Positions 2,834 to 62,598 of a DNA stretch of 64,000 bases are shown here, one piece after another. The stretch spans positions 163,697 to 227,696 of the IMG/VR virus record IMGVR_UViG_3300026512_000002; one strand, 5' to 3'. Each line of letters starts with the position of its first letter. Position 1 is the first letter of the stretch. The position numbers and the translations under genes are program-made. The notes beneath the pieces were generated by a model. The model saw nothing but the letters and a program-made list of their open reading frames with translations. It ran no database searches and was not told where the DNA came from.

Positions 2834-2845
2834 TATTTAATTGTT
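2834..2845 (-). promoter_or_regulatory. Putative late promoter AACA-N6-TA
   Basis: AACAATTAAATA upstream of 2814; matches the AR9 late consensus. Confidence 0.55.
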
Positions 2846-2856
2846 AATACTTGATA

Positions 2857-3975
2857 TTATTTCAATTCACGAAGTAAATTTTCTTTAACTGTTTTTATAT
2901 CGATATTATCATTACTAATGTCATCATCGTCAGTATCACCACCTATCAATGAATCTTTTATCACATCATCTACATCATCATTAGGGTCCTTTTTCTTTTC
3001 ATCCAATACGTTTAATAATTTTTCATACTTATTGTTCATATTATCATCAATTGATGCTGTTGCAAACGTTTCGGCAATAATACTAATATTATCATCATAT
3101 TCATACTCATATGACTCAACAACACCTTTGTTTAGTATACCTTCAGCAACTCTTCTTATATTACCATAAAACTTAATATATAAACTCATAAGCTTTTTCA
3201 CTTCACCTATTATAATTGTACTAGCTAATTTATAAGCTTGTGTAGCAGCAACCATACCGTTTTGGTTTCTAGGTTTAGTTATACTACCTTTTCCAATATA
3301 TTTGAATTCAAGATTTCTATTAGCTATTTTAGTCCCAGTTGTTTTATTTTTAGCAATTAGAAATGTTTCAGCATCATTCATAATATTATCCATTTTACTA
3401 TACATTGATCTGAGCAATATAATGTCACCGTTACCATTGGTAATAGCATCAGTAATATCTTTCATATATTTGTTAGCTTTTTTAGTGGTGTAATGTTTTT
3501 TCAAATATTCTGGATCAGTTAATTTGATAAACACATTATGTCTTTTACGAATAAGACTTATATGTTTATCCGGATTAGTTGCAATTACTTTCATTTTACC
3601 ATCAATCAATATTTTAATATTATCGGCAACACTATTCTTAGCATCTTTTATATACTTATAATCTAATGACACTATTTTTTTATCTGAATTTTTTAAACCC
3701 GTAATAATTGTATTAAGATTACTCTTTAACATATTAACAGTACTTTCCAACTCACTCAATGTATCACCTAAATTTTCTTTAAGACCACCTAATAATTTTT
3801 TAAAAAACTCGATAATACTATCAATGATACCTTCATTAATAACATCATAAAGTTGGTCTAATGCAACATAATCTTCTGATAAGATTAAATCGCGTTCAAT
3901 AGCATAGTGCTCTTCCAAAAAATCGGCTATTTCTATTTCAGATTCTAAATATAAAACCCTATCTTGATCTGTCAT
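2857..3975 (-). CDS. Putative internal head protein (phiKZ internal-head-like architecture)
   Basis: Acidic leader ending VINE, then amphipathic GIIDSIIEFFKKLL and a basic helical body. An acidic C-terminal tail follows VVE-S. Confidence 0.6.
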   Translation of the reverse strand: MTDQDRVLYLESEIEIADFLEEHYAIERDLILSEDYVALDQLYDVINEGIIDSIIEFFKKLLGGLKENLGDTLSELESTVNMLKSNLNTIITGLKNSDKKIVSLDYKYIKDAKNSVADNIKILIDGKMKVIATNPDKHISLIRKRHNVFIKLTDPEYLKKHYTTKKANKYMKDITDAITNGNGDIILLRSMYSKMDNIMNDAETFLIAKNKTTGTKIANRNLEFKYIGKGSITKPRNQNGMVAATQAYKLASTIIIGEVKKLMSLYIKFYGNIRRVAEGILNKGVVESYEYEYDDNISIIAETFATASIDDNMNNKYEKLLNVLDEKKKDPNDDVDDVIKDSLIGGDTDDDDISNDNIDIKTVKENLLRELK

Positions 3976-3984
3976 ATTATACTC

Positions 3985-5094
3985 CTATATTAAAATCAAA
4001 TTATCATCAATTTTCTTTTTAACATGTACACCAGTCATATCTGTAACATCTCCAACAGCATCAGAATGTGTATCTATGTTAGGTATATCACTACCCGTTT
4101 TAATTGCAGGTACTCGTTTATCTATTTTTCTTTCAACTATTTCAGCGGTCATAATTTTATTTTCTTCAGCAATATCGTCTTCGACTTGTTTGCTTATCGT
4201 TTTCTCTTTTACTTCTAAAAATTTAGCCCATTTCTTCAATCGCTCAGTCCATTTTTTTTCTTTAAATGCAACTGAACGGTTGTATCTAGCATCAATACCA
4301 GTACTTAATGATACATAGCTAGATTTTGTAAACATTGCAACATCTTCTAAATAATCAGATACGTTTTGTTTTATATGAAAAAAAAACCATGTAACTTTTC
4401 TCAACAAATATATTGCTGTTAAAATAGCCCCACCCATAATAAGAGCAGGTGCTGCTTCGACTATGATATTACTATCGTCTATGCTGCTACTCTGATCTAT
4501 TATAACGCTTTCATCTAATATAACTAAAGATTTAATTGTTTTTTCATTCATGGTATTTAAAATCGTTTTAGCCGCTTTTAAATAAGTTTCAATAATAATA
4601 CCTCTATTGATCACACTAAAACCATTCGCTCTACGACCCACAAACTTAAACCCTGAAATATTATCATTCATTCTAATTGTTGTGCTCAATATATATCTAC
4701 TAATAAATAATATAACTATAATAATAGTTAAATATAATGTTTTAATATTTTCATTATGGAAATTACTTTTAAACATATTTTTATAAGCCAACACGCGTTT
4801 ATATAACTGTTCACCTGTATGTATCAGATCTATAGTTAATTCATCAGCAACCTTGTCATTCCCAAATGCTAAATGACGCATTATTGTAAATAAATTTCCC
4901 TCTAATCCTTCTATTTTAGTAATATCACCTTTACTATTTTCAATTTCAGAACTAGAAACATATTCAGACGATACTCTTAAATTTTTCAATACACTAGTTA
5001 GTAACCTAAGATTAGTATCATCATTATGGCTATTTTCTACAATATAATCATATAGTTTATTATCATTTACTATCTCTTTAATATTATTAATCAT
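3985..5094 (-). CDS. Virion structural protein with two hydrophobic segments
   Basis: 369-aa ORF with hydrophobic stretches TLYLTIIIVILFISRYIL and APALIMGGAILTAIYLL, the latter directly after IIVE. I recall this gene pairing with the next gene in AR9-like phages. Confidence 0.55.
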   Translation of the reverse strand: MINNIKEIVNDNKLYDYIVENSHNDDTNLRLLTSVLKNLRVSSEYVSSSEIENSKGDITKIEGLEGNLFTIMRHLAFGNDKVADELTIDLIHTGEQLYKRVLAYKNMFKSNFHNENIKTLYLTIIIVILFISRYILSTTIRMNDNISGFKFVGRRANGFSVINRGIIIETYLKAAKTILNTMNEKTIKSLVILDESVIIDQSSSIDDSNIIVEAAPALIMGGAILTAIYLLRKVTWFFFHIKQNVSDYLEDVAMFTKSSYVSLSTGIDARYNRSVAFKEKKWTERLKKWAKFLEVKEKTISKQVEDDIAEENKIMTAEIVERKIDKRVPAIKTGSDIPNIDTHSDAVGDVTDMTGVHVKKKIDDNLILI

Positions 5095-5096
5095 AT

Positions 5097-6851
5097 CTAC
5101 CTTCTACTATTCGTATAATCTATTAAACTTTTAATTATTTTATTTTGACTTGAGTCATTTTCATTTTTGATATCACTAAACATGTACGTGTCAAATGTCT
5201 TATCATCAACATCATACATGTCAACAGTTTCATTAGCTTGATCAACAATTAAAAAATTGGTAATCAATAATTTGGAAAACAACATATTTGTGTATCTACT
5301 ATTTCTAATATCTATTCCATATTTTTCATTTAGTACAAAAACATCATCAGTTGATAGAATTAAACTAGAAACAGGTAAAGTTACAGGTCTTTTAAATGTC
5401 TTACGTATAATATTATCTGAATGACCATCAAATATCTTTTTCCATAATTTAGGTATGCGACTATTTCTATCTCTAGCAATTGTTTTAATACCATTATTTA
5501 TACCTAATAAGATGTCTTTAAATAAAGATATTTCTCCAGAACTCCATTTAATAAAATTAAGTAAAACAGATTTATTTTTAACAGCATTTGCAATTTGATC
5601 AAGCATCTCAGATTGTTTAATAAAATGTGATTTGGTCTTAATGGCTAACATTTTTCGCATATTTAAGCTTTTACCATCACTAGTAGTAACTACGACTTCA
5701 AACTCAACAAGTGTTGGTTGTAACGAATTGTATTTTTTAACAACTTGATCTAATAATCTACCACCATTTTGTACAACACCTAACACTTTTGGGGTATCAC
5801 CAATATTATCAGATGTGATATCAGATATTGCTTTTTCCCAATTTTTACCATCCATATCACCTATAATATCTTCTGGTCTAGCATATTTTTTTAACAAATC
5901 TTTTTTATTAGCATAATATTGGCCTCTAATAGTGGAAGCTAGTTCTTTACCAAGTTCTTCCTTAGTGGCTAATTGTATATCTAATTTACGATTAATGTCA
6001 ACAATATCTTTTCGTATAGCATTATACCTAGCACTGTCTTGTGGTATCGAATTTAATTCATTTTGCAATATCTCTCTGTTGTGTAACATACCTTTGATAT
6101 CTCGCGATACATTATTATAGTTCTTTTTCACATCATCTATTAACTTAACAGATACATTGTTTTTATTAGTTGAATTTTTATTGTTTTCATCATTGTTGTT
6201 GTTTTCATTTCTATTATTAGCATTTCTATTATTGTTGTTGTTGTTTTCATTTCTATTATTAGCATTTCTATTATTGTTGTTGTTGTTTTCATTTCTATTA
6301 TTGTTATTTCTATTATTAGCATTTCTATTATTATTATTTCTATTATTATTATTATTATTTCTATTATTAGCATTTCTATTATTGTTATTTCTATTATTAG
6401 CATTTCTATTATTGTTATTTCCATTTCTTCTAGTAGCTTCATTTAATATAGCTAAATTTATATCATGAGACACATTCATATATTCTAGGATATATGACCA
6501 ATTTTTAATATAATGAATCGTATTAACAGATCCTTTATTTAAGTCTAATAACATTGATTCATTTTGATAAGTTAACCCAATGTGTTTTTTAATAGAGTCT
6601 TTAACATCTATCGCTTGATGCGCTGACATTATTATCTGTATATATGATACATATTCACGTTCCAAACCCTTCATTAATAAAGATGCTACATCATAATCAA
6701 TACCATCTGTAAAAATAAGTGGAAAAACAAGAGTATCTTTATTTGCCATTTGTCTAAAAGTTGGAACTTTTGACATTGGATTACCTATAATGAGTTTCTT
6801 AACCTCATCGAATGATGCGTTAGCAAATTGTACTATATCTGAAATAGCCAT
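5097..6851 (-). CDS. Jumbo-phage virion structural protein with Asn-rich insert
   Basis: The N-terminal TLVFPLIFTDGIDYDVASLLMKGLEREYVSYIQII resembles a conserved AR9-like virion protein as I recall it. Late motif upstream; LNE-A site just before the Asn-rich tract. Confidence 0.6.
   Translation of the reverse strand: MAISDIVQFANASFDEVKKLIIGNPMSKVPTFRQMANKDTLVFPLIFTDGIDYDVASLLMKGLEREYVSYIQIIMSAHQAIDVKDSIKKHIGLTYQNESMLLDLNKGSVNTIHYIKNWSYILEYMNVSHDINLAILNEATRRNGNNNNRNANNRNNNNRNANNRNNNNNNRNNNNRNANNRNNNNRNENNNNNNRNANNRNENNNNNNRNANNRNENNNNDENNKNSTNKNNVSVKLIDDVKKNYNNVSRDIKGMLHNREILQNELNSIPQDSARYNAIRKDIVDINRKLDIQLATKEELGKELASTIRGQYYANKKDLLKKYARPEDIIGDMDGKNWEKAISDITSDNIGDTPKVLGVVQNGGRLLDQVVKKYNSLQPTLVEFEVVVTTSDGKSLNMRKMLAIKTKSHFIKQSEMLDQIANAVKNKSVLLNFIKWSSGEISLFKDILLGINNGIKTIARDRNSRIPKLWKKIFDGHSDNIIRKTFKRPVTLPVSSLILSTDDVFVLNEKYGIDIRNSRYTNMLFSKLLITNFLIVDQANETVDMYDVDDKTFDTYMFSDIKNENDSSQNKIIKSLIDYTNSRR
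6180..6420 (-). repeat. Asn-rich coding repeat (NNNNRNA / NNRNE units)
   Basis: Imperfect tandem AAT/AAC/AGAAATGCT units inside 5097-6851. Confidence 0.9.
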
Positions 6852-6873
6852 ATAACCTCTATTGTATAATATT

Positions 6874-6885
6874 TATACTATTGTT
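6874..6885 (-). promoter_or_regulatory. Putative late promoter AACA-N6-TA
   Basis: AACAATAGTATA upstream of 6851. Confidence 0.55.
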
Positions 6886-6936
6886 TATAAAAAAAAATAA
6901 CAGGGATGTGTGTGTAATATTTTTAATTATCTATAG

Positions 6937-7563
6937 TTAATCCATATCTCTAACCTTATTTTTACCATAGACATATGTTAACAAATCCCACATATTTGAA
7001 GATTGTTCCCCGTTATTTTTACTACTACTTTCATTATTTTTATCGACATAACTATTAGTATAATTACTATTACTATTGTTTCTGTTGGCATTTTTTTTGT
7101 TCTTATAATTATTATTATTATTATTATTTCTCTTACCACCATTAACATAGTTATTATTAACATAATAATGATTATTTTCAATCACATAACTATCATCTCT
7201 TATCCTATTAGAGTTATTAGTTTTCTTTTTCTTATAAGGTTTCTTACCATGATAACAATTATTTTTCTTTGATTTAAAACCCTTATTAGTTTCACTAAAA
7301 CTTATGAATAACCAAATACCCTTGGTTCTCATAAGAACAACTTTCTGCATCATATAGATCTTAGAAGTTTCAATAAGTGTTCTTAGCGATTTCTTATCGA
7401 ATATTTTACCTCTAACAGTACAGTATTTATTTTTTTTTAAGTCGATATTCTTGTATTCTTGCTTAAAAGTTTTTAGAAATACTTGACTACGATCTAATAT
7501 GATAAAATTATTCTCACCACCCATATTTATGGCTGATAAAACTTTTTTATACATATTAGTCAT
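6937..7563 (-). CDS. Hypothetical basic protein with Lys/Asn-rich disordered C-terminus
   Basis: 208-aa ORF, SD GAGGAG, ATATATTAT motif upstream. Confidence 0.65.
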   Translation of the reverse strand: MTNMYKKVLSAINMGGENNFIILDRSQVFLKTFKQEYKNIDLKKNKYCTVRGKIFDKKSLRTLIETSKIYMMQKVVLMRTKGIWLFISFSETNKGFKSKKNNCYHGKKPYKKKKTNNSNRIRDDSYVIENNHYYVNNNYVNGGKRNNNNNNNYKNKKNANRNNSNSNYTNSYVDKNNESSSKNNGEQSSNMWDLLTYVYGKNKVRDMD

Positions 7564-7593
7564 AATCTCTCCTCATATTACACACACACAAAT

Positions 7594-7605
7594 ATAATAT
7601 ATTAT
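7594..7605. promoter_or_regulatory. Putative early motif, palindromic ATAATATATTAT
   Basis: Lies in the divergent intergenic gap; similar to the phiKZ early motif TATATTAC. Confidence 0.35.
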
Positions 7606-7634
7606 CGAATATATTGTTAAATAATAGTATGTAT

Positions 7635-7646
7635 AACAATGTATTA
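7635..7646 (+). promoter_or_regulatory. Putative late promoter AACA-N6-TA
   Basis: AACAATGTATTA 21 nt before ATG 7668. Confidence 0.55.
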
Positions 7647-7667
7647 AAGATAAATATAGGATTCAAT

Positions 7668-9380: not shown

Positions 9381-9395
9381 TTGTGAGGATAACTT

Positions 9396-12203: not shown

Positions 12204-12205
12204 TA

Positions 12206-12217
12206 AACAATATATTA
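12206..12217 (+). promoter_or_regulatory. Putative late promoter AACA-N6-TA
   Basis: AACAATATATTA upstream of 12237. Confidence 0.55.
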
Positions 12218-12236
12218 AAAACTATAAGGTGATACT

Positions 12237-13001: not shown

Positions 13002-13023
13002 TAACAATTAATAGAGGTGTATA

Positions 13024-15630: not shown

Positions 15631-15651
15631 TATTTTATAATATTTAATAAA

Positions 15652-15704
15652 ATCGATAATAGTAGTGGATGATCATATATATGTCATCCGCTATTATTAT
15701 CGAT
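15652..15704 (+). other. 21-bp RNA stem-loop with G-U pairs
   Basis: ATCGATAATAGTAGTGGATGA pairs with TCATCCGCTATTATTATCGAT; the two non-Watson-Crick positions are G-U on the plus strand. No U-tract. Confidence 0.7.
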
Positions 15705-15731
15705 CATTACACTAATAAGATCATGTTAATT

Positions 15732-15743
15732 AACAATGGATTA
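15732..15743 (+). promoter_or_regulatory. Putative late promoter AACA-N6-TA
   Basis: AACAATGGATTA upstream of 15767. Confidence 0.55.
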
Positions 15744-15766
15744 AATAACTATTATAAGGACACATA

Positions 15767-17560: not shown

Positions 17561-17579
17561 ATCATACCCCATATTTTTA

Positions 17580-18824: not shown

Positions 18825-18833
18825 ACCACACCC

Positions 18834-19718: not shown

Positions 19719-19730
19719 TAATATATTGTT
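19719..19730 (-). promoter_or_regulatory. Putative late promoter AACA-N6-TA
   Basis: AACAATATATTA upstream of 19691. Confidence 0.55.
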
Positions 19731-25670: not shown

Positions 25671-25705
25671 CCAAATATTTATCGATGAATTACCAAAGAG
25701 GATTT

Positions 25706-26323
25706 ATGAAAATTTTAAATAACTACATTGCAATAGAAGGCATTGATGGCGCTGGTACAACAACACAGGTCTTAAAATTAGAAGAATTGATAAAGAAAGA
25801 TGATGATATAGATTATATTGTTACCAATGAACCTGCTAATTCTAATATAACCAAACTAATCCGTCATAAATTAAATAGCGGGTACGCTATTAAGCATCAA
25901 TATGAATTAGCATTATTATTTGCTGCTGATAGATTAGAACATCATCATAGAACAATTATTCCAGCTATTGAAAGTAACAAATTGATAATAAGTGATAGAT
26001 CGATTATGTCGTCATATGTTTACCAATCAGTATTCACAAACGATCTTACATGGATCAAATCAATAAATAAATATGCTATTATGCCAAATATCATCATATA
26101 TTTGGACATAGATGCTGAGATAGCAATGAAAAGAATGCTAGGTAGAAATAAATTGGATTCTTATGAAAAAATTGATTTACTGGTTAAATATAGAAAGACA
26201 TATATAGATCTTATAGATAAAATGAAAAATGATACAAACATTTTAATATTAGATGGTACTTTACCAGTAGATGATATCACTACAAAAATATATAATATTA
26301 TATATAATAAAAATAGACATTGA
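25706..26323 (+). CDS. tmk: Thymidylate kinase
   Basis: YIAIEGIDGAGTTTQ (P-loop variant), TNEP, LLFAADR, IISDR; start ATG 25706 after GAGG. Confidence 0.92.
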   Translation: MKILNNYIAIEGIDGAGTTTQVLKLEELIKKDDDIDYIVTNEPANSNITKLIRHKLNSGYAIKHQYELALLFAADRLEHHHRTIIPAIESNKLIISDRSIMSSYVYQSVFTNDLTWIKSINKYAIMPNIIIYLDIDAEIAMKRMLGRNKLDSYEKIDLLVKYRKTYIDLIDKMKNDTNILILDGTLPVDDITTKIYNIIYNKNRH

Positions 26324-26348
26324 CAAGTAATTAAATGTAGGAGTGTTT

Positions 26349-26972
26349 ATGAAAATTATTAAACAACATGTTACAATATTAAAAGACAATATTGATGAAA
26401 GTGACGAGGATTTAAAAAAAAGAATTTATTTGAAATTAGAAAAAATTGCTAGAAACGCATATGCTAGTGAACATAAAAATCCAAATAATAATTTATCTAT
26501 AACAATAGATTTTTTAAAAAAAATCATGAGAAAAAAACATTTAGGTATATTAGAACATGTTCAGGTGTCATTTGAAATTGTTGCAAACAGAGCAATATTA
26601 AATGAATTAGTTAGACATAGAATGGCTAGTTATGTTCAGAACTCTACTAGATATATAAGATATAATGATGATATTGAATTTATTGAACCATACGGATTTG
26701 TTGAAAATAGTGTTGAGTACAATATATGGCTTAAAGCATGTAGACAGTCAGAACATGCATATCATAAACTACTTAATAATGGTATCAATCCAGGTAATGC
26801 TAGAGATGTGTTAAACTTATCATTAGCTTCAAAAATCATAGTTACAATGAATTTACGTTCATGGTTACATTACCTAGAACTTAGATTAGCCAAGACAGCT
26901 CACCCACAAATTAGAACAATATCTAATGAAATAAGTGAAATATTACATGGAATGTTACCTATAATATTTTAA
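26349..26972 (+). CDS. thyX: FAD-dependent thymidylate synthase
   Basis: H.GILEHVQVSF, ELVRHRMASYVQNSTRY (RHRx7S), VTMNLRSW.HYLELR...AHPQIR. Confidence 0.95.
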   Translation: MKIIKQHVTILKDNIDESDEDLKKRIYLKLEKIARNAYASEHKNPNNNLSITIDFLKKIMRKKHLGILEHVQVSFEIVANRAILNELVRHRMASYVQNSTRYIRYNDDIEFIEPYGFVENSVEYNIWLKACRQSEHAYHKLLNNGINPGNARDVLNLSLASKIIVTMNLRSWLHYLELRLAKTAHPQIRTISNEISEILHGMLPIIF

Positions 26973-28906: not shown

Positions 28907-28918
28907 AACAATATTATA
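28907..28918 (+). promoter_or_regulatory. Putative late promoter AACA-N6-TA
   Basis: AACAATATTATA upstream of the portal gene. Confidence 0.55.
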
Positions 28919-28940: not shown

Positions 28941-31430
28941 ATGGTTGCTAAAAAACACAGTAGTATGAAATTCAATAAAAAAATGATAAATGAACTAGAA
29001 CGTAATCAAACTATAATAGATAAAGCATTAGACCAACACGACAATTTACTTAAACGTAAAGAAGTTAATATCAATATAGTTGATGATATTTTAAGCGATA
29101 TAAAAACCGAACTGTCTAATGGTAACCATGATGTTGGTATTGTTGAATTAACAGGTCGTTTAGATATTGTTAGAGAACGTAAAACCGTTGCAAGATTTCA
29201 AAAAAAAATTAACGGTATTAAAAATATGTTAAATAAAGAAGAAAATGTATCATTAGCAAATACATTATATATGTTAGAAACAGATAGGTTTAAAAAATAT
29301 ATCGACTATCATAAAATTGTGAAACTTTTACCAAATATGGATGAGAACGTTGAAACATATTTGGATAATATAATGTCTCCTGATGACTATACTAAACAAT
29401 CGTTAAACCTAGAATATAACATACCTGATATCAATAAAGATCATAAGAATAGTGTTATGAAAAAATTAAAAACATTAAAAACAACTTATGATATTGATAA
29501 ACTTGTAAAAGGTACTATAAAGAATGCTTTAGAATTGGGCGATGGTTTTATAATGATTAAACCTATCGGTGTTGGATTATCCGATGCTTACAACAGTGTT
29601 GCTAAAAACATGGTTGTTACAACAGAAAAACTATCCGATAAAATGATAGAATTAGAAAATGCTAATGTTAACATAGATATGAATAGAGTTTTTAATGAAA
29701 CCAACACACTATATAAAGAAAATGATATACTGACAGATGATCGAAAACTATTATCAGAAATAAACACACTTATAATAGAACATAATAAAAATATCGATAA
29801 AAGTAATAATATTAATAATAATAAATTTAGCACATTATCCGAATCTAAAAACAATCCTAAAAAACATAAAATATCTCAAAAAGACATAGCTTCTCTTATG
29901 AATAAAGTTATCAAGGATAGTGTTGTTGTCACAGATGACACATCCACACTTTTACAGGATATGAATACCATTGTTAGTGAACGTAATAAAAGAAATAAAA
30001 ATGTTGACACCCTAGATCTAAACACTAAATATGATTCAATATATGGTGGTAATTATAAAGCTGCACGTAAATTAGCTAATTTTAAAAACATTAATGGTTC
30101 TGTAGTTAGAAGACTTGAGCCTAATAATGTTATAAAAATAGAAGTTGAAAATATATGTTATGGTTATTATTACATTGAAAGTAAAACAGGATCATTAAAT
30201 AATCGTATAGATACCGCTAGTATGGGTTTAGGTCCAAACGAATATAGCGACACAGGTGGAAGTGGACTACTGTCTACAATAGACGGTAATAGCCGTCAAA
30301 ATACACTATTGCTTTTACGTAAAAACAAACTAATACATAAGTTATTTGCTGAAAAATTAGTGCATAATATAAATGATCGGTTTATAAAAAAAAATCCAGA
30401 ATTTAAAAACATTATATACAACATGTTAGAACAACATGATATTCTCAATCATTCCGAATATGTACGTATCACATATTTACCTCCTAATGAAGTTGTACAT
30501 TTTAAAGTAGGTGATAATACTTATGGTAGATCAATATTTGAAAATGTATTATTTTTAGCAAAAATATATTTAGCAACATTATTATCTACCCTTATGAGCA
30601 AATTGCTACGAGGACAAGATCATAGATTGTTTTATGTTGATATAGGATTAGATGGTGCACCTAGAGAAGAAGTTGATGCTGCAGTTAGAAATATAACTCA
30701 ACGTGAAGTTAAGAATATGGGTATGCAAGATATCGATACTATTCTCCATGTAGTATCTCAATTTGAAGATAGTATTATACCAACATACGATGGTGAAAAA
30801 CCATTGGAAATTGATGTGTTGCCTAAAATGGATATTGATATTAATAATGAATTTTTAGAATTGTTAAATAAATTGATTCAAGCTGGTATAGGTGTACCAA
30901 CATCTTTTATACAATCTTTAGAAGAAGTTGAATTAGCTAAAGGTTTATCAATGGTTCATGAAAAATTCTTAATACGAGTTGTTAATCAACAATCCGAATA
31001 TCAATCCGCAACAAACCAATTAATTAGGATATTGTATTATAATGAATATTTGTTAAATAATAAAAACGCAGAAAACAACGATATTGATATATCACAAATT
31101 AAGTTAGTGTTCCCATCACCTACAACTCTACGATATACAAATATGATGGATCAATTAAATAACGCTAAAAATATTGTTGATGAAATAATTTCTACTATGT
31201 TTGATGAAAGTGGTAATATGTATGGTGATACCCCAAATGATAACAACTTATTAACAGAAACTAAAACCCAGATGAGAATAAAATTGATGGCCAAATATGC
31301 ACCATCTATAGATTGGGAAGAATTAGAAGAAATGAAACATAATTTAATGATATCGTTAAAAAAAGATGAAAATCAATATGGTGATGGTGAAAATAATGTA
31401 TCGACAACAAACACCACATCAACAACATAA
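28941..31430 (+). CDS. Portal protein (jumbo-phage type)
   Basis: YLDNIMSPDD, ALELGDGFIMI, YGRSIFENVLF, RLFYVDIGLD, IGVP and FPSPTTL match my recall of T4 gp20 / phiKZ-type portals. Start is ATG 28941 or GTG 28929. Confidence 0.75.
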   Translation: MVAKKHSSMKFNKKMINELERNQTIIDKALDQHDNLLKRKEVNINIVDDILSDIKTELSNGNHDVGIVELTGRLDIVRERKTVARFQKKINGIKNMLNKEENVSLANTLYMLETDRFKKYIDYHKIVKLLPNMDENVETYLDNIMSPDDYTKQSLNLEYNIPDINKDHKNSVMKKLKTLKTTYDIDKLVKGTIKNALELGDGFIMIKPIGVGLSDAYNSVAKNMVVTTEKLSDKMIELENANVNIDMNRVFNETNTLYKENDILTDDRKLLSEINTLIIEHNKNIDKSNNINNNKFSTLSESKNNPKKHKISQKDIASLMNKVIKDSVVVTDDTSTLLQDMNTIVSERNKRNKNVDTLDLNTKYDSIYGGNYKAARKLANFKNINGSVVRRLEPNNVIKIEVENICYGYYYIESKTGSLNNRIDTASMGLGPNEYSDTGGSGLLSTIDGNSRQNTLLLLRKNKLIHKLFAEKLVHNINDRFIKKNPEFKNIIYNMLEQHDILNHSEYVRITYLPPNEVVHFKVGDNTYGRSIFENVLFLAKIYLATLLSTLMSKLLRGQDHRLFYVDIGLDGAPREEVDAAVRNITQREVKNMGMQDIDTILHVVSQFEDSIIPTYDGEKPLEIDVLPKMDIDINNEFLELLNKLIQAGIGVPTSFIQSLEEVELAKGLSMVHEKFLIRVVNQQSEYQSATNQLIRILYYNEYLLNNKNAENNDIDISQIKLVFPSPTTLRYTNMMDQLNNAKNIVDEIISTMFDESGNMYGDTPNDNNLLTETKTQMRIKLMAKYAPSIDWEELEEMKHNLMISLKKDENQYGDGENNVSTTNTTSTT

Positions 31431-31446
31431 TATAATGGAGGTTTAA

Positions 31447-33244: not shown

Positions 33245-33256
33245 AACAATATAATA
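33245..33256 (+). promoter_or_regulatory. Putative late promoter AACA-N6-TA
   Basis: AACAATATAATA upstream of 33287. Confidence 0.5.
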
Positions 33257-48072: not shown

Positions 48073-48084
48073 TAATGTATTGTT
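48073..48084 (-). promoter_or_regulatory. Putative late promoter AACA-N6-TA
   Basis: AACAATACATTA upstream of the TMP gene. Confidence 0.55.
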
Positions 48085-56788: not shown

Positions 56789-56824
56789 TAAATTATACAA
56801 AGGACCTCCAAACAACACATTTAT

Positions 56825-56836
56825 TATAAACTTGTT
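56825..56836 (-). promoter_or_regulatory. Putative late promoter AACA-N6-TA
   Basis: AACAAGTTTATA. Confidence 0.5.
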
Positions 56837-56848
56837 GCATTTAACATT

Positions 56849-56884
56849 AAAAAAAAAATAGGTGTCTAATCACCTATTTTTTTT
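56849..56884. terminator. Bidirectional intrinsic terminator
   Basis: A-run, TAGGTG / CACCTA, T-run. Confidence 0.8.
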
Positions 56885-56909
56885 AATGTTATACTAGAAC
56901 TAATAATAT

Positions 56910-57539: not shown

Positions 57540-57578
57540 ATAAAACCTCCTTAAAAAAATAAATATAATATCAATATC

Positions 57579-57587
57579 ATAATATAT
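57579..57587 (-). promoter_or_regulatory. Putative early motif ATATATTAT
   Basis: Upstream of 57539. Confidence 0.4.
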
Positions 57588-57795
57588 ATATCAAAGTAAT
57601 ATAAGTATTGAGCGATATATGAGTTAATATGCTATAATAATAGTAATATACAAAAACTCTTTCTTCAATAACACCCTTATCTACCAATAATATGTACTAT
57701 CTTTCACATTTCACTTCAAACCAATTTTTCCTGATGAAATAAAGAGTAGATATAAGGTTATTTTTATAATAGCTTTTTTTATAATAATAAGAAAT

Positions 57796-57807
57796 AACAT
57801 ATTTATA
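57796..57807 (+). promoter_or_regulatory. Putative late promoter AACA-N6-TA
   Basis: AACATATTTATA upstream of 57830. Confidence 0.45.
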
Positions 57808-57829
57808 ATAATTGATGAGGTTATATAAT

Positions 57830-58165
57830 ATGGATATTATACGTAAAAGACTTGAACTAAATAAAATCATGGACGACATAGCATTTGAATTAAATGAAGA
57901 ATTCTCAATATTGATGGAAGATGACATCGAAAATGATCCAATCATATTAAATATATTGGATTATGGTTTGATTACCGAAAACAGTATCGAGATGGAAAAT
58001 CTTGAACTTGAAACAAATGACAGTGTGACCAATGATGCCAATAATATAGTCTTTAAAAAAATACCTAAATATAAATTAGGTAATAGTAAGAGAAAAAAAG
58101 AGGATTACAAACTTGTAGATCCAGAAAAGTTGAAATCAATGAAAAATATATTAAACGAAGAATAG
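57830..58165 (+). CDS. Small protein, acidic N-half and basic C-half (possible head protein)
   Basis: ATG 57830 after GAGG; ELNE, LME and ITE sites. Confidence 0.65.
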   Translation: MDIIRKRLELNKIMDDIAFELNEEFSILMEDDIENDPIILNILDYGLITENSIEMENLELETNDSVTNDANNIVFKKIPKYKLGNSKRKKEDYKLVDPEKLKSMKNILNEE

Positions 58166-58187
58166 TATTTATTAAAGGAGGTTTACT

Positions 58188-58724
58188 ATGAGCAAAGCTA
58201 GCGTTTACAAATGTGTTCTACCAAAAACAGGTTTTATACCAATTCTAAGAGTATATGGTCCACTAGATCAACCATTCATATGTACAAAAATGCAATATGA
58301 GAAATTATTGGCTATGGGTTATCCTATTACAATAGTTGATAACGATCCTAAACTTAAACTAAGAAAAGAATTAGGTTTAACAATACCTAAAGATATTAAT
58401 ACTACTACATCACCAGTAAATAATGTTGAAACTAAAATTACTTCTACTGAAAAAACTAAACTAAATCAAACAAATGAAACTGAAAAAACTAAACTAAATC
58501 AAACAAATGAAACTGAAAAAACTAAACTAAATCAAACAAATGAAACTGAAAAAACTAAAACTGTTGAAAAAACACCATATGATGATTTAAAACCATACGG
58601 TGTCGGAAAATTACGCAGATTAACCTTAGCTCAATTGAAAGAATTGTCTAAAATTGAAAATTTGGAAGAACGCGACACTAAAGCTAAAAATATTGAACAA
58701 ATTTTAGATAAATATAAAAAATAA
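58188..58724 (+). CDS. Protein with 11-aa repeat linker and C-terminal HeH / Rho-N-like domain
   Basis: GFIPILRVYGPLDQP N-domain; LRRLTLAQLKELSK...TKAKNIEQIL C-domain. Confidence 0.6.
   Translation: MSKASVYKCVLPKTGFIPILRVYGPLDQPFICTKMQYEKLLAMGYPITIVDNDPKLKLRKELGLTIPKDINTTTSPVNNVETKITSTEKTKLNQTNETEKTKLNQTNETEKTKLNQTNETEKTKTVEKTPYDDLKPYGVGKLRRLTLAQLKELSKIENLEERDTKAKNIEQILDKYKK
58446..58559 (+). repeat. 33-nt tandem repeat, 3 copies plus a partial (TEKTKLNQTNE)
   Basis: ACTGAAAAAACTAAACTAAATCAAACAAATGAA, identical copies. Confidence 0.95.
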
Positions 58725-58744
58725 TTTATAAATAGGGGATTGTT

Positions 58745-58876
58745 ATGTTAAATATAGACGATTTATGTTATCTAAATGTTTGTGATTATACTACTGATAT
58801 TGAGGAATATTTTATCAATGAAATAGGATTCAAAAATACACAAGAATTGGTAAATAACATTAAATATGAAGAATAA
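58745..58876 (+). CDS. 43-aa acidic peptide (not in track)
   Basis: MLNIDDLCYLNVCDYTTDIEEYF...KYEE; AGGGGA upstream. Confidence 0.5.
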   Translation: MLNIDDLCYLNVCDYTTDIEEYFINEIGFKNTQELVNNIKYEE

Positions 58877-58913
58877 ACATTTATTATTTAACATATATTC
58901 TAGTGGTAATAAA

Positions 58914-59396
58914 ATGGAATCAAATAATAATAATAATAAAGATATATTTAAAGACATTGTCGATTTAGATGAGTTATTCGGAGAAAGCATCGATGCTTAT
59001 ACAAATGAACTGAAAATATCAGAAGAATTATACAATGAAGTTAAAAAACATTATGACAAAGTTATGACGGAATCCGTATCCAAATATATTGATTATACTG
59101 ATGGTGGAAAAGAAAAGACTAGAGAAAATCCAAGAGCTTTTGCAACACAACAATTAACCAACCTAGTTAGTCTACGAAGCCATATTGGTTCTACTATAAA
59201 GGATAGGTTTAACATTCAAAAAGAAAAAGCTGTATTAACAATACGTTTACAACAAATTATTGGTGGTGATATAGAAAGCGATGATAGTACAATTATAAAC
59301 CAACTTGTTTTAAGACTAAGTGATAACCCAATTAATAAAAAAGAGACTAAAACTGAAATAGATATAGATCTTATAAAAAAGAAAATAGATGGTTAA
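58914..59396 (+). CDS. Hypothetical protein
   Basis: Track ORF 58866-59396; ATG 58914 preferred because it avoids overlap with the small ORF. Confidence 0.6.
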   Translation: MESNNNNNKDIFKDIVDLDELFGESIDAYTNELKISEELYNEVKKHYDKVMTESVSKYIDYTDGGKEKTRENPRAFATQQLTNLVSLRSHIGSTIKDRFNIQKEKAVLTIRLQQIIGGDIESDDSTIINQLVLRLSDNPINKKETKTEIDIDLIKKKIDG

Positions 59397-59839
59397 ATAG
59401 TTATATAACTATCATATAACCCAGTACCATATATATCGCTATCCCTATTTTTCAAATTATCCATAAATATTAATATAGCTGTTTTATCCAAATAAAACAC
59501 ATCATCCATAGTAAACATAGCAGGATCATACACATTGTTAAGTTTCATTAAGAAATACCCTAACACATACGTCTTATATTTATAATATGAATAATGATGT
59601 GGTTTCATTTTAAACTTGTTAGGTAGTTTCTCAACAGATGCCATGTTTTTATACAAATTTATATGTTTAGATAGAAAATCATCTAATGTGATAACACTAC
59701 CGTCATCCATAACATAGTCCACCATAATCCTTCGAGTTGATAATATATTATTTTTATCATTCATAATCTCGTCCATAACATGTAAACCATCATTATTGTA
59801 TTGAGATAAATCCATAACTATATGAGATTTCAACATCAT
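59393..59839 (-). CDS. Baseplate gp53-like (LysM-related) protein
   Basis: FKMKPHHYSYYKYKTYVLGYFLMKLNN resembles the gp53 'P..LS...YG...L...I...N' pattern; in an operon with the spike. Confidence 0.5.
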   Translation of the reverse strand: MMLKSHIVMDLSQYNNDGLHVMDEIMNDKNNILSTRRIMVDYVMDDGSVITLDDFLSKHINLYKNMASVEKLPNKFKMKPHHYSYYKYKTYVLGYFLMKLNNVYDPAMFTMDDVFYLDKTAILIFMDNLKNRDSDIYGTGLYDSYITI

Positions 59840-60468
59840 TAACTCCTATTACTCAACCTTCTATTAAAATTAGTAAACGACCTTTCAAAAGCAACTCTAT
59901 CAAAATATGTTGATTTAACTATATTAAACATACTATCATCTAATTTAGGATTTAGATAATTAATTATTTCATCAATGTATAATATATCATCAACACCTAA
60001 ATGCCTAGAATATTTTAACCTATTGAATAATGGTACAATTAGTCTAAAGTTCAATATGTCCCAAAGTCTAGATTCAGGTCTCTCAAATGTCATATTTTCA
60101 GCTATAGCTATAACTATACTATCATTATACTCAAACGGTATAATATCATTGTTTATCATATCATATATAAATGGACTAACAACATATTCTGGCGCACCTA
60201 TAGTTATTTGAAAATCATTACCAACTTGTTCTATTAAATAATGATATGGTATGCCAGTTATCCTATTAGCAGCCATATCTTCTTTTTTAACTTCTTTTTC
60301 ATAATAATACTCCCATATTGGCGCGGTTAACTGTGATGATCCAAATATGATATTATTATTAATAGGGTAACCTTTTCTTATAAAATTAGGTAGCTGAGAC
60401 AATATTATCTTTTTTGTTGTTTTTCTAGCAAAAAATCTAATTTCTTTATCTAATATATATGTTGACAT
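59839..60468 (-). CDS. Amidase_2-fold protein, probably catalytically degenerate
   Basis: KKIILSQL (normally IxxHH), IPYHYLIE, NDSIVIAI. Confidence 0.5.
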   Translation of the reverse strand: MSTYILDKEIRFFARKTTKKIILSQLPNFIRKGYPINNNIIFGSSQLTAPIWEYYYEKEVKKEDMAANRITGIPYHYLIEQVGNDFQITIGAPEYVVSPFIYDMINNDIIPFEYNDSIVIAIAENMTFERPESRLWDILNFRLIVPLFNRLKYSRHLGVDDILYIDEIINYLNPKLDDSMFNIVKSTYFDRVAFERSFTNFNRRLSNRS

Positions 60469-60477
60469 TTATAACTC

Positions 60478-62571
60478 CTATCTAGTAGTAACATTAGTTG
60501 ATTGAGCCAAAGTATCTACCAATTGTACTACTGGAACACCTGTTGGTCCAGCAGAAGTTGGATGAACATGGGTTTTTATTAAATTTAATAAATATGATCC
60601 AGATAACACTTTTTTATAAGCACTAGAACCACCTAAGTTAATATCATTAGATTTAATATTAACAGAACCTACTGCTTTAAAATTAAGATCAGTAGCCGAC
60701 ATATCTATTGTATCATCAGCCTTAATATTTATATTATCACCTTTTATATGTATGTCTCTAGCTTCCAAATACATTTCGCCATCTTTAGAAATTATTTTTA
60801 TAGTCCCTGTTTTTGATTTAACATTAAACACCCCATCAGGTATACGTATATCAACCACACCATCCATATCACTAGACATTTTCAAACCTACAACTTCATC
60901 ACCACCATCATATGCACCTAAACTTACATTCAATACACCATACACGTCTTCATCATAATATTCTAACACATTGGTATATGCTCCCATACTTGCTTTATAC
61001 GCACCGTTTATAGCAGAATCTTTCACACTGTGTAACCCGACATATGCTTTATCTAGAGTCGTTTCTGATACAAACTCTAGCCCTCTTGTACTCGTAGCTC
61101 CCATATATCTAGCTTCATTAGTATCCAAATAATTTGGATCTTTATACACGGTATACCAATTAGTTTTCACAATTTCATTACTTTTATCAATAGTGCTAAT
61201 TTTGGTAATTTCACCAGTATTGGTTTTAATGGTACTTGTAGCATTAAGTACACTATCATCTATTTTAAACGATCTATATATCTTATCAATAACACTATCA
61301 TCATCAACCTGACTTCTATCTATTAAAATACTAGATATGACTTTATCATCTTGCATGTCCATATTTTCAACAGTGTTTACACTATATTTCCTATCATCAC
61401 CCATATTAGTAAAATTAATGTTGTTTTTTATATGAGCACCACTATAATCTAATAATATTTCATTATTTTTAACAGTTTTATATTTTTCACTTAAAGTGTT
61501 TGTCACATTAGTTGTGTTGTTAAATAATACATCAGCTAATTTAAGCACCTGTTTATAACTAGTACCTCTAGTTTTTTTATTATCTTGAGTAAACTTTTTC
61601 TCAATAGTTTCAATATTATAATCAGAGCCCATGTTAACAGAAGTGGTGTTATTAGCCATTATTTTGTCATTATCTTTATACATGGCGTTATTCATGAGAT
61701 CAATAGAACCTCTACTAATATTTTTCTTTTCAGAAACATTACTTACGGTATATTCGTCTAGCTTATATGTAATAGTTGTATCATCGGATATATTGTCATC
61801 ATGAACAACAGTATTTTTATTATAATTAAATGCATCCATACTATTAACTAGTGTCAAATATTCAGTCCCATGTTCACTATTATTATAATTTTTACCAACA
61901 TTTAAAACCATACTAGATTCAGTATTACCAGCATTTATTTTCATTTCACCAGAATATCTACTGTCATATCGTTTCACATAAACTTCAAAACTACTATGGT
62001 TGTCTATAGAAGACATAGCAGGACTCACATTTTCTTGATTAGGGCTCCTAAAATGTAATTCAGACCCATTGTCAAATATTATGAAAAAATGTCTTTTATC
62101 ATTAGATGTGTTAACACCAACAATATCTCTATTCCAAAATTCTGTTATTTTTAACATATGCTTTTTATAAACATTATAAAAATCTATTTTATCCTCTAAA
62201 TCAAGATTAACGCCTGGTATACTTTCACCTGATTCTGGTAAACTAAATCCAGGTAAATAATAACATTTTTGTTTATCACCATTCAAAAAAAATACAATGG
62301 TATAACTTCCCAAACTTGGGGTATTATACGTCCCACCTGTGCTATTAAATATATTTGTAGCATAAACACCATTGTCATAATAATTAGCTGGTATAGCTAA
62401 TATCATTTTACTTTCTATATTTTTAGAACCACTACCTATGGTAATATTATTGTCTGTAGCTATATTAGCATCATAACCCATAAGATCTGACACATGTACA
62501 CCAATAATACCAGATAATTGAGAATCGGATACATTTACAACTTTAGCTCTATAAAAACCTACCAAATCCAT
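60478..62571 (-). CDS. Baseplate central spike (gp5/VgrG/gpV-like)
   Basis: OB-fold start FYRAKVVNVSD..LSGIIGV...PSLGS.TIVFFLNGD; C-terminal beta-strand repeats; HVH apex (THVHPTSAGPTG). Start ATG 62571 after GAGGAGG. Confidence 0.8.
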   Translation of the reverse strand: MDLVGFYRAKVVNVSDSQLSGIIGVHVSDLMGYDANIATDNNITIGSGSKNIESKMILAIPANYYDNGVYATNIFNSTGGTYNTPSLGSYTIVFFLNGDKQKCYYLPGFSLPESGESIPGVNLDLEDKIDFYNVYKKHMLKITEFWNRDIVGVNTSNDKRHFFIIFDNGSELHFRSPNQENVSPAMSSIDNHSSFEVYVKRYDSRYSGEMKINAGNTESSMVLNVGKNYNNSEHGTEYLTLVNSMDAFNYNKNTVVHDDNISDDTTITYKLDEYTVSNVSEKKNISRGSIDLMNNAMYKDNDKIMANNTTSVNMGSDYNIETIEKKFTQDNKKTRGTSYKQVLKLADVLFNNTTNVTNTLSEKYKTVKNNEILLDYSGAHIKNNINFTNMGDDRKYSVNTVENMDMQDDKVISSILIDRSQVDDDSVIDKIYRSFKIDDSVLNATSTIKTNTGEITKISTIDKSNEIVKTNWYTVYKDPNYLDTNEARYMGATSTRGLEFVSETTLDKAYVGLHSVKDSAINGAYKASMGAYTNVLEYYDEDVYGVLNVSLGAYDGGDEVVGLKMSSDMDGVVDIRIPDGVFNVKSKTGTIKIISKDGEMYLEARDIHIKGDNINIKADDTIDMSATDLNFKAVGSVNIKSNDINLGGSSAYKKVLSGSYLLNLIKTHVHPTSAGPTGVPVVQLVDTLAQSTNVTTR

Positions 62572-62586
62572 AACAACCTCCTCGAT

Positions 62587-62598
62587 TATACTGTTGTT
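62587..62598 (-). promoter_or_regulatory. Putative late promoter AACA-N6-TA
   Basis: AACAACAGTATA upstream of the spike gene. Confidence 0.55.

What the first reader, a model, noticed from the sequence alone, without database searches (positions are those of the whole stretch)
2834..62598. AR9-type late promoter motif in a phage that encodes its own dTMP pathway
SEEN: AACA-N6-TA lies shortly upstream of 12 structural or presumed late genes (2834, 6874, 7635, 12206, 15732, 19719, 28907, 33245, 48073, 56825, 57796, 62587). Eleven of the twelve read AACAA-N5-TA. SEEN: intact thyX and tmk genes. ESTABLISHED: the AR9 non-virion RNAP recognises this consensus in the template strand and depends on deoxyuridines there, because AR9 DNA contains U. 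INFERENCE: this relative probably has T-DNA yet keeps the motif, so its specificity subunit may read T, or uracil may be placed locally.
Basis: partly seen in the sequence, partly recalled or inferred. Interest (0 to 1): 0.6.

Follow-up and report, generated by a model that had tools for sequence, protein, structure and literature searches.

The report
AR9-type late promoters, thymine-DNA phage
An uncultivated giant phage related to Bacillus phage AR9 keeps AR9's unusual late-promoter motif and its own five-subunit RNA polymerase, but its genes point to normal thymine DNA rather than uracil DNA, and the one polymerase residue known to reject thymine is naturally changed, making it a natural test case for how a viral polymerase reads DNA chemistry.

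Summary
All 12 reported sites exist. The loose pattern AACA-N6-TA is not enriched in the window overall (126 vs 120 expected). It is strongly enriched where it matters: 42 of 203 genes carry it 13-46 nt before the start codon, against 8.2±2.7 in shuffles (z=12). It precedes homologues of AR9 virion genes and no replication or transcription genes.

The window belongs to a 227.7-kb IMG/VR phage (89% complete) that is a distant AR9 relative. It encodes all five non-virion RNA polymerase subunits, including a gp226 homologue outside the window.

thyX and tmk are intact, although Tmk's P-loop lysine is a threonine. The genome also has a canonical dUTPase and lacks the PF00383 deaminase. Six complete cultured relatives show the reverse: deaminase present, no ThyX, no dUTPase. 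Thymine DNA is therefore likely but unproven.

In AR9, gp226 Val206 excludes thymine at -10. Here and in the nearest relative it is Asn; all six cultured relatives keep Val. Across about 150 family representatives the position varies (Val in only 83), while the AACA motif persists in related fragments.

Verdict: real late promoters, and a new variant of a known system. The T-reading mechanism is inferred, not shown.

The parts
2834..2845 (-). Late-promoter motif AACAATTAAATA. Predicted TSS at 2834. It lies 31 nt before the start of gene 1738-2814 (-).
6874..6885 (-). Late-promoter motif AACAATAGTATA, 34 nt before gene 5097-6851 (-). That gene is a homologue of the AR9 g214 minor virion protein.
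7635..7646 (+). Late-promoter motif AACAATGTATTA, 33 nt before ATG 7668 of gene 7668-9380 (+). That gene is a homologue of the AR9 g213 virion protein; 9396-12203 (g212 homologue) follows in the same operon.
12206..12217 (+). Late-promoter motif AACAATATATTA, 31 nt before gene 12237-13001 (+).
15732..15743 (+). Late-promoter motif AACAATGGATTA, 35 nt before gene 15767-16582 (+).
19719..19730 (-). Late-promoter motif AACAATATATTA, 39 nt before ATG 19691 of gene 18834-19691 (-).
28907..28918 (+). Late-promoter motif AACAATATTATA, 34 nt before the portal gene (28941-31430 +). That gene is a homologue of the AR9 g128 portal vertex protein.
33245..33256 (+). Late-promoter motif AACAATATAATA, 42 nt before gene 33287-33751 (+).
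48073..48084 (-). Late-promoter motif AACAATACATTA, 29 nt before the 4184-aa gene 35501-48055 (-). That gene has weak similarity to the AR9 g204 tape measure protein.
56825..56836 (-). Late-promoter motif AACAAGTTTATA, 18-36 nt before gene 52913-56818 (-), depending on the start chosen. The gene is about 1300 aa and has no family match.
57796..57807 (+). Late-promoter motif AACATATTTATA, the one site that is not AACAA. It lies 34 nt before ATG 57830 of gene 57830-58165 (+).
62587..62598 (-). Late-promoter motif AACAACAGTATA, 27 nt before ATG 62571 of gene 60478-62571 (-), with a GAGGAGG Shine-Dalgarno sequence between.
31421..31432 (+). It overlaps the end of the portal gene. Weaker candidates of the same kind are at 20234 (+) and 21384 (+).
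26343..26972 (+). thyX, the flavin-dependent thymidylate synthase. The ORF is intact and the RHRMASYVQNSTR catalytic motif is present.
   Evidence: TIGR02170 122.6 bits, cut-off 87.9
25685..26323 (+). tmk homologue. The ORF is intact and passes the dTMP-kinase equivalog model. However, its Walker-A lysine is threonine (codon ACA at 25757-25759).

Best explanation
The AACA-N6-TA sites are late promoters of the phage's own AR9-type non-virion RNA polymerase, with transcription starting at the final A. The genome encodes all four split beta/beta' subunits and a gp226-like sigma-like subunit, all outside the window. As in AR9, the enzyme probably reads the -11..-8 element in the template strand. 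Unlike AR9, this phage most probably has thymine DNA: it encodes dUTPase, ThyX and a Tmk-like protein, and it lacks the dCTP-deaminase-type enzyme that supplies dUTP in uracil-DNA relatives. Its polymerase must therefore accept T at template positions -11 and -10, where AR9's enzyme demands U. The natural replacement of gp226 Val206 by Asn195 in this phage and its closest relative is the leading candidate for part of that adaptation.

Shown: motif enrichment, position and gene-class bias; homology of all five subunits; the nucleotide-gene complement; the substitution.

Inferred: TSS position, template-strand reading, DNA chemistry, and any causal role of Asn195.
For: - Motif: 42 of 203 genes vs 8.2±2.7 in shuffles, controls flat. 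The peak lies 30-34 nt before start codons and mirrors AR9's own peak under the same pipeline.
- Gene class: the motif precedes 11 of 21 homologues of AR9 virion or structural genes and 0 of 15 replication or transcription homologues (Fisher p=7e-4).
- Consensus: it is identical to the published AR9 late consensus AACA-N6-TA/G (PMC5312081).
- Kinship: 49 proteins hit AR9, including nvRNAP betaN (38% identity), betaC, beta'N, beta'C and gp226. A gp226-homologue profile hits PDB 7S01 chain A at E=5.8e-37 over residues 34-440.
- dUTPase (genome 7902-8528): it scores 146.8 bits on the 'dut' model (cut-off 102.55) and only 40 bits on the dCTP-deaminase model. All five dUTPase motifs are present.
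- ThyX is intact.
- Contrast with relatives: AR9, BpSp, Machias, SA1, phiR1-37 and LPJP1 all have a PF00383 deaminase and none has ThyX or dUTPase. AR9, BpSp, Machias and SA1 also lack Tmk and ThyA; those two families were not searched in phiR1-37 and LPJP1. This genome has no PF00383.
- Biochemistry: that deaminase is the dUTP-supplying Dcd in PBS1 and phiR1-37 (PMC12697855).
- Val206: it sits 3.9 Å from C5 of the -10 uracil, and V206G accepts T (PMC9209446). Here and in P0002 the residue is Asn. W208, Y210 and betaN R363 are kept, and the six cultured relatives keep Val.
Against:
- The contig is about 89% complete, so a deaminase or a UDG inhibitor could lie in the missing part.
- The T-type gene set rests on one genome.
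- Tmk lacks its P-loop lysine.
- Asn retains a C-beta, so relief of the clash is not self-evident.
- AR9's discrimination at -11 comes from the DNA backbone conformation, not from residue 206.
- Position 206 is variable in the wider family (Val 83, then Lys, Thr, Ile, Gly, Ala, Pro, Arg, Asn and others among 157 sequences). A close relative (P0016) has Val, so Asn could be neutral drift.
- The AF2 model of the subunit was too poor to inspect the pocket (pLDDT 49.7).
Confidence: 0.62

Rival explanations
1. The phage still has uracil DNA, like AR9. On this reading dUTPase and ThyX are acquired accessory genes, are used only at a particular stage, or are inactive. The U-DNA enzymes lie in the missing ~11% of the genome or are too diverged to detect, and the AACA promoters work exactly as in AR9.
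For: - The contig is 89% complete.
- AR9's own dTMP phosphatase is invisible to Pfam NT5C, so divergent enzymes can be missed.
- Tmk's Walker-A Lys is lost.
- An HD-domain protein exists at 21411-22448, and an HD hydrolase serves as the dTMP phosphatase in roseophage DSS3_VP1 (PMC12697855).
Against: - A dUTPase with all five catalytic motifs would destroy the dUTP pool that U-DNA synthesis needs. None of six complete cultured relatives has a dUTPase or ThyX, and all have the deaminase.
- AR9's UGI, Dcd, Dtm and g210 give no tblastn hit at E<=0.1.
- The HD protein is fused to a polynucleotide-kinase-like P-loop domain and looks Pnkp-like.
- The U-specific Val is replaced.
Confidence: 0.12
2. 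The DNA carries neither plain T nor U at these positions. Instead it carries another pyrimidine modification, for example a post-replicative thymidine hypermodification, and residue 206 (Asn) is tuned to that group.
For: - Position 206 takes many different residues across the family, which would fit several different C5 chemistries.
- Many window genes have no known family.
Against: - There is no ThyA-type dUMP hydroxymethylase (PF00303 absent).
- No modification enzyme was recognised.
- The ThyX, dUTPase and Tmk set is the ordinary dTTP route.
Confidence: 0.08
3. The motif is not an nvRNAP promoter. It could be a host sigma-factor promoter, an RNA-processing site or a translational element that happens to resemble the AR9 consensus.
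For: - The regions are AT-rich.
- Some sites contain TATAAT-like strings.
- No TSS data exist.
Against: - The invariant core is AACA, not a -10 hexamer.
- Spacing, orientation and late-gene bias equal those of AR9 under the same analysis.
- The motif is also enriched in five related contigs that carry gp226-family genes.
- The complete nvRNAP is encoded.
Confidence: 0.04
4. Uracil is placed locally at promoters in otherwise thymine DNA.
For: None was found.
Against: - No known mechanism puts dU opposite A at chosen sites.
- Cytosine deamination would need C, not T, in the sequenced template strand.
- The encoded dUTPase works against dU incorporation.
Confidence: 0.02

Closest known systems
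Bacillus phage AR9 / PBS1 late promoters and five-subunit non-virion RNAP (gp105, gp089, gp270, gp154, gp226)
   Same: - The same consensus AACA-N6-TA/G sits a short distance before late genes.
- The same split beta/beta' subunits and a gp226-like subunit are encoded.
- An AR9-like AT-rich early motif (TATATATTAT) stands before replication and polymerase genes.
- W208, Y210 and betaN R363 of the -10 pocket are conserved.
   Different: - Protein identity is only 22-50%.
- gp226 Val206 is Asn, and betaN K375 is Gln.
- The nucleotide genes are reversed: dUTPase, ThyX and Tmk-like are present; Dcd, Dtm and UGI were not found.
- Leaders are slightly shorter (peak 30-34 nt vs 35-45 nt).
- A is preferred at +2.
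AR9 gp226 V206G mutant (Fraser et al. 2022, PMC9209446)
   Same: It is a change at the same residue of the 2.1bis helix, one that experimentally lets the enzyme use T at -10.
   Different: - Here the change is natural and is to Asn, not Gly. Gly does occur naturally in six other family representatives.
- The effect of Asn is untested.
- V206G was tested for tolerance at -10; whether it relieves the T exclusion at -11 was not seen in the sections read.
phiKZ non-virion RNAP (gp68 sigma-like subunit, TATG late promoter)
   Same: It is a T-DNA jumbo phage with a homologous five-subunit polymerase.
   Different: phiKZ reads TATG at the start site in the non-template strand, through the beta-like subunit (PMC12809450). 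There is no AACA element, and gp68 was not detected by sequence searches started from this protein.
Uracil-DNA jumbo phages phiR1-37, Staphylococcus S6-like (Machias, SA1), Listeria LPJP1, Bacillus BpSp
   Same: They carry gp226-family subunits and two multisubunit RNAPs.
   Different: All keep Val206 and a PF00383 deaminase, and all lack ThyX and dUTPase.

Membership tests
AR9-type nvRNAP late promoter | Consensus AACA-N6-T(A/G) on the coding strand | tested here: met
   The 12 listed sites are present and there are about 42 genome-wide. A is used at the last base in 57 of 63 sites.
AR9-type nvRNAP late promoter | Located a short, fixed distance upstream of late (virion) genes, co-oriented, and absent from early genes | tested here: met
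   The peak lies 30-34 nt before starts. The motif precedes 11 of 21 structural homologues and 0 of 15 replication or transcription homologues, p=7e-4.
AR9-type nvRNAP late promoter | Transcription starts at the last base of the motif | not testable with these tools
AR9-type nvRNAP late promoter | Recognition needs deoxyuridine at template positions -11 and -10 | not testable with these tools
   Gene content argues that the DNA has T. If so, this defining feature is not met and the element is a T-compatible variant.
gp226 family (sigma-like nvRNAP specificity subunit) | Full-length sequence homology to AR9 gp226 | tested here: met
   BLASTP gives E=3e-19 over 314 aa. The profile against PDB 7S01_A gives E=5.8e-37 over residues 34-440.
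gp226 family (sigma-like nvRNAP specificity subunit) | 2.1bis helix residues I/M207, W208 and Y210 that hold -10U and stack on -9G | tested here: met
   The residues are M196, W197 and Y199.
gp226 family (sigma-like nvRNAP specificity subunit) | Val206, described as absolutely conserved in U-DNA phages and the determinant of U over T at -10 | tested here: not met
   The residue is Asn195 here and Asn in P0002. Val is kept in AR9, BpSp, Machias, SA1, phiR1-37 and LPJP1.
dU-DNA phage (PBS1 / phiR1-37 type biosynthesis) | Phage dCTP deaminase of the CDA fold (PF00383) supplying dUTP | tested here: not met
   There is no PF00383 match in the 227.7-kb record, while all six cultured relatives have one. 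Caveat: the record is 89% complete.
dU-DNA phage (PBS1 / phiR1-37 type biosynthesis) | Enzyme removing dT nucleotides (Dtm or Dtt) and a UDG inhibitor | tested here: inconclusive
   AR9 g151, g104 (UGI) and g210 give no tblastn hit at E<=0.1. These proteins diverge fast, and Pfam NT5C misses even AR9's own enzyme.
dU-DNA phage (PBS1 / phiR1-37 type biosynthesis) | No phage dUTPase or thymidylate synthase | tested here: not met
   A canonical dUTPase and ThyX are both present.
AR9-like jumbo phages with two multisubunit RNAPs | Shared core genes, including virion and non-virion RNAP subunits, major capsid, sheath, portal and terminase | tested here: met
   49 proteins hit AR9 at E<=1e-4, including vRNAP homologues of g078, g145 and g264.

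The most novel reading that the evidence does not exclude
The template-strand AACA promoter mechanism is not tied to uracil DNA. On this reading, in a large and mostly uncultivated family of gp226-like subunits (441 clusters), residue 206 is an evolutionary switch that tracks the C5 chemistry of the genome's pyrimidine. Val would mean U-DNA; Asn, Gly, Lys, Thr and others would mean T or other modifications. Genome base chemistry could then be predicted from this one residue, and this phage would be the first recognisable T-DNA member.
Probability: 0.25. Interest if true: 0.75.

Novelty: new variant of a known kind. Interest (0 to 1): 0.62.

Why it matters
AR9's non-virion polymerase is the textbook case of a promoter read in the template strand that depends on uracil. 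The literature treats the AACA mechanism as uracil-specific, and treats T-DNA relatives such as phiKZ as using a different mechanism. A relative that keeps the AACA promoters and the same five-subunit enzyme, carries a thymine-type nucleotide gene set, and has a natural change at the U/T-discriminating residue gives a direct system to test. The test is to express five genes, transcribe T and U templates, and swap one residue. It would address how a sigma-like factor senses a single methyl group and in which order U-DNA and its polymerase co-evolved. The size and variability of the family also suggest that the 'absolutely conserved valine' reflects sampling of only a few cultured phages.

Tried and rejected
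- **Whole-window enrichment.** The loose pattern shows none, so a positional test was needed.
- **Structure.** The AF2 model of the gp226 homologue from a 4-sequence alignment was poor (mean pLDDT 49.7; residues 182-399 below 50). I ran no pocket analysis and no fold search.
- **betaN K375.** This is the second -10 pocket contact. It is Gln here but Asn in U-DNA Staphylococcus phages, so it does not discriminate.
- **Comparative test in relatives.** IMG/VR and metagenome scans gave only short relatives: L024 11 kb, L025 17 kb, G001 33 kb, L040, L041. Three IMG/VR fragments with non-Val subunits (G002 Met, G003 and G004 Lys; 20-36% complete) hold none of PF00383, PF02511, PF00692 or PF00303, which is uninformative. 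Flank look-ups for P0019 and P0171 (both Asn-type) were also uninformative.
- **Closest ThyX relative.** P0006 (51% identity) sits in an unrelated DNA-polymerase-A phage fragment. It therefore says nothing about the sister phage.
- **Pfam NT5C** fails to detect even AR9's dTMP phosphatase, so it is useless as a marker.
- **Window gene annotation.** PHROGs and Pfam gave no hits for 20 window proteins next to the promoters.
- **Failed alignment queries.** Alignments A1 and A5 were too diverse for the search for related loci.
- **'Local uracil'** was rejected for lack of any mechanism.

Full report
**What the window is.** The 64-kb window is the last 64 kb of a 227,696-bp linear IMG/VR phage record (JGI Ga0256842_1000004). 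CheckV estimates it at 89% complete and its GC content is about 27%. It has no near relative in the phage collection at the DNA level. A tblastn of my 204 ORF calls against AR9 (KU878088, fetched) gave 49 proteins with hits at 22-50% identity. These include:
- major capsid, sheath, portal, terminase and prohead protease;
- three virion-RNAP pieces;
- all four split beta/beta' subunits of the non-virion RNAP: betaN at genome 160623-162179, betaC at 117705-119681, beta'N at 96930-98258 and beta'C at 149684-151519;
- a homologue of the promoter-specificity subunit gp226 at genome 140084-141529 (-), 481 aa.

The gp226 homologue matches AR9 gp226 at E=3e-19. A profile of it and two relatives matches PDB 7S01 chain A at E=5.8e-37 over residues 34-440. 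All five polymerase genes lie outside the window. The phage is therefore a distant member of the AR9 group.

**Checking the observation.** All twelve sites are present on the stated strands. Eleven read AACAA-N5-TA. The loose pattern is not over-represented in the window as a whole (126 vs 120.4±11.3), so a raw count proves nothing. Position does.
- Each site lies 27-42 nt before a co-oriented start codon with a Shine-Dalgarno sequence.
- Genome-wide, 42 of 203 genes have AACA-N6-TA within -46..-13, against 8.2±2.7 (maximum 19) in 1000 dinucleotide-preserving shuffles of those segments (z=12.4).
- The stricter AACAAT-N4-TA gives 18 genes against 1.4.
- The reverse-complement and reversed patterns are at or below expectation.
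- AACAAT-N4-TA is about seven times denser in intergenic than in coding DNA.
- The identical pipeline on AR9, whose late promoters were mapped by dRNA-seq and primer extension, gives the same picture: a sharp peak at 35-45 nt in AR9 and at 30-34 nt here.

The published AR9 late consensus is AACA-N6-TA/G with the last base as the start site (PMC5312081). In this genome the motif stands before 11 of 21 homologues of AR9 virion or structural genes. It stands before none of 15 homologues of replication or transcription genes (Fisher p=7e-4). Several of those early-type genes instead carry TATATATTAT, the core of AR9's early consensus AAATATATATTAT-N6-G. Related contigs that carry gp226-family genes also show the motif before their genes. 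I take the sites to be late promoters of the phage's own polymerase.

**thyX, tmk and DNA chemistry.**
- thyX (26343-26972) passes the Pfam and TIGR02170 cut-offs and keeps the RHRxxSxxxxSxR motif.
- tmk (25685-26323) passes the dTMP-kinase equivalog. Its Walker-A lysine is threonine: GIDGAGTTT against GIDGSGKTT in a solved Tmk, with codon ACA at 25757-25759. By itself it is weak evidence.
- Outside the window, at genome 7902-8528, there is a trimeric dUTPase. It scores 146.8 bits on 'dut' (cut-off 102.55) and 40 bits on the dCTP-deaminase model. All five dUTPase motifs are present, including the C-terminal RGGGFGSTG.
- The genome has no PF00383 deaminase and no ThyA.

Six complete cultured phages with a gp226-family gene (AR9, BpSp, Machias, SA1, phiR1-37 and LPJP1) show the reverse. 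Every one has the PF00383 deaminase and none has ThyX or dUTPase. AR9, BpSp, Machias and SA1 also lack Tmk and ThyA; those two families were not searched in phiR1-37 and LPJP1. That deaminase is the dCTP deaminase that supplies dUTP in PBS1 and phiR1-37, and a nucleotidase-like protein (the AR9 g151 type) is the dTMP phosphatase (PMC12697855). AR9's UGI, Dcd, Dtm and g210 give no hit here even at E<=0.1. A catalytically complete dUTPase works directly against bulk dU incorporation. I put thymine DNA at roughly 0.8, with three caveats: 11% of the genome is missing, this is a single genome, and nothing was measured.

**The specificity subunit.** The AR9 structure paper makes four relevant points (PMC9209446).
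- The -10 uracil sits in a pocket formed by the gp226 2.1bis helix and betaN.
- Its C5 atom is 3.9 Å from C-beta of Val206, and V206G makes the enzyme accept T at -10.
- The -11 uracil is discriminated by the DNA backbone, and position -8 tolerates T.
- The valine is 'absolutely conserved' in homologues from U-DNA phages.

In pairwise and multiple alignments the AR9 segment Y-S-D-V-V206-I-W-T-Y corresponds here to G-N-N-T-N195-M-W-E-Y. W208, Y210 and I/M207 are kept and Val206 is Asn. The closest relative (P0002, 46% identity) also has Asn. AR9, BpSp, Machias, SA1, phiR1-37, LPJP1 and several uncultivated relatives have Val. BetaN R363 is conserved. K375 is Gln here but Asn in the Staphylococcus phages, so it does not discriminate.

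**How singular is the substitution?** A profile search of 1.84 billion cluster representatives found 441 family members, 135 of them at E<=1e-30. I ran this costly search because any claim about the substitution's rarity depends on how many relatives exist. In an alignment of 157 sequences the block T-x-Y-S-D-K-x-[IM]-W is well kept, with W in 151 of 157. The 206 column is variable: Val 83, Lys 11, Thr 11, Ile 9, Gly 6, Ala 5, Pro 5, Arg 5, Asn 4, and others. On a FastTree the residue changes repeatedly, including within this phage's own subclade, which reads Ile, Val, Lys, Asn, Val, Asn, Asn. So the valine is conserved among cultured U-DNA phages but not in the family at large. This weakens 'Asn is a unique adaptation'. 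It raises a broader possibility: the residue may track DNA chemistry. AACA-N6-T[AG] remains enriched before genes in fragments whose subunit has Met, Lys or Val at this position (14 vs 3.3, 6 vs 2.8, 14 vs 3.0 and 7 vs 1.4). Residue 206 therefore does not change the core sequence that is read. That fits a role in sensing the C5 substituent rather than base identity. I could not test the association with nucleotide genes. The accessible fragments are 6-36% complete and hold none of the marker genes, and the long contigs (267 kb, 353 kb) are outside what the tools let me read.

**Mechanism proposed.** Early genes, including the polymerase subunits, would be transcribed from TATATATTAT-type promoters by the injected virion RNAP. 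The five-subunit non-virion enzyme would then initiate at the A of AACA-N6-TA, giving leaders of about 20-24 nt. It would read 3'-TTGT-5' in the template strand through the gp226-like subunit and betaN. Because the DNA is probably thymine DNA, the -10 and -11 pockets must accommodate a 5-methyl group. Asn195 is the leading candidate for the -10 pocket, but Asn keeps a C-beta and the -11 solution is unknown.
- Shown: the sequence features, homologies and gene complement.
- Inferred: TSS, strand read, DNA chemistry and the residue's role.

**Comparison and novelty.** The element works like, and by sequence is, an AR9 late promoter. The polymerase is a member of the AR9 nvRNAP family. [quoted passage not shown] In the papers I could search, no AR9-type phage with thymine DNA or a natural residue-206 variant is described. 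I rate this a new variant of a known kind.

**Scores.**
- Real late promoters: about 0.9.
- Thymine DNA: about 0.8.
- Asn195 as a functional adaptation: about 0.35.
- The combined explanation as worded: 0.62.
- Interest: 0.62.

Noticed in passing
window 25757-25759 (within tmk 25685-26323): The invariant Walker-A lysine of thymidylate kinase is threonine (GIDGAGTTT, codon ACA), one base away from AAA. The rest of the protein scores as a dTMP-kinase equivalog. It may be a weakened kinase, a pseudo-kinase, a nucleotide-binding protein or an assembly error.
   Followed up: partly
window 52875 (-), 57579 (-), 62867 (-), 19784 (+), 7594/7596; genome 117667 (+): TATATATTAT/AATATATTAT, the core of AR9's early (virion RNAP) promoter consensus, stands 37-74 nt before several genes. 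These include the DNA polymerase catalytic subunit, nvRNAP betaC, the head of the + strand cluster that runs on through tmk and thyX, and several small genes. The early promoter type appears to be conserved too.
   Followed up: partly
genome 7902-8528 (+), outside the window (window coordinate about -155800): A canonical trimeric dUTPase with a ~70-aa N-terminal extension. It is absent from all six complete cultured relatives examined.
   Followed up: yes
gp226 family, column of AR9 Val206 (alignment of P0001-P0161): The gp226-like subunit family is far larger than the literature suggests: 441 clusters at 50% identity. The 'absolutely conserved' valine is present in only 83 of 157 aligned members. 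Gly, the engineered T-tolerant change, occurs naturally in six.
   Followed up: partly
window 35501-48055 (-): A single 4184-aa ORF with only a weak local match to the AR9 tape measure protein g204. It has its own late promoter at 48073.
   Followed up: no
window 21411-22448 (+): A fusion of an HD phosphohydrolase domain with an AAA_33/polynucleotide-kinase-like P-loop domain (Pnkp-like). It lies in the same + strand gene cluster as tmk and thyX. An HD hydrolase is the dTMP phosphatase of one U-DNA roseophage, so its substrate would be worth testing.
   Followed up: partly
window 24033-25220 (+) and 28323-28832 (+): An AntA/KilAC antirepressor-domain protein and an M23 peptidase. These are among the few window proteins with any Pfam match.
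   Followed up: no
window 990-19691 and 52913-62571: Twenty proteins next to the late promoters, some over 1000 aa, have no PHROGs or Pfam match at all. The structural module is very poorly represented in the reference families.
   Followed up: partly
genome 68244-68305 and 69066-69127 (outside the window): Two identical ~50-nt copies of an early-type promoter region (aaaaaagttaaaTATATATTATacgtgtatatagcaatatcgc...). Each lies 60 nt before a ~200-aa gene, which suggests a recent tandem duplication of an early gene cassette.
   Followed up: no
whole genome vs AR9: No tblastn hit to AR9's ribonucleotide reductase genes (g222-g224), which sit next to gp226 and the deaminase in AR9. The nucleotide-metabolism module near gp226 is absent or replaced here. 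This was not checked with family models.
   Followed up: no
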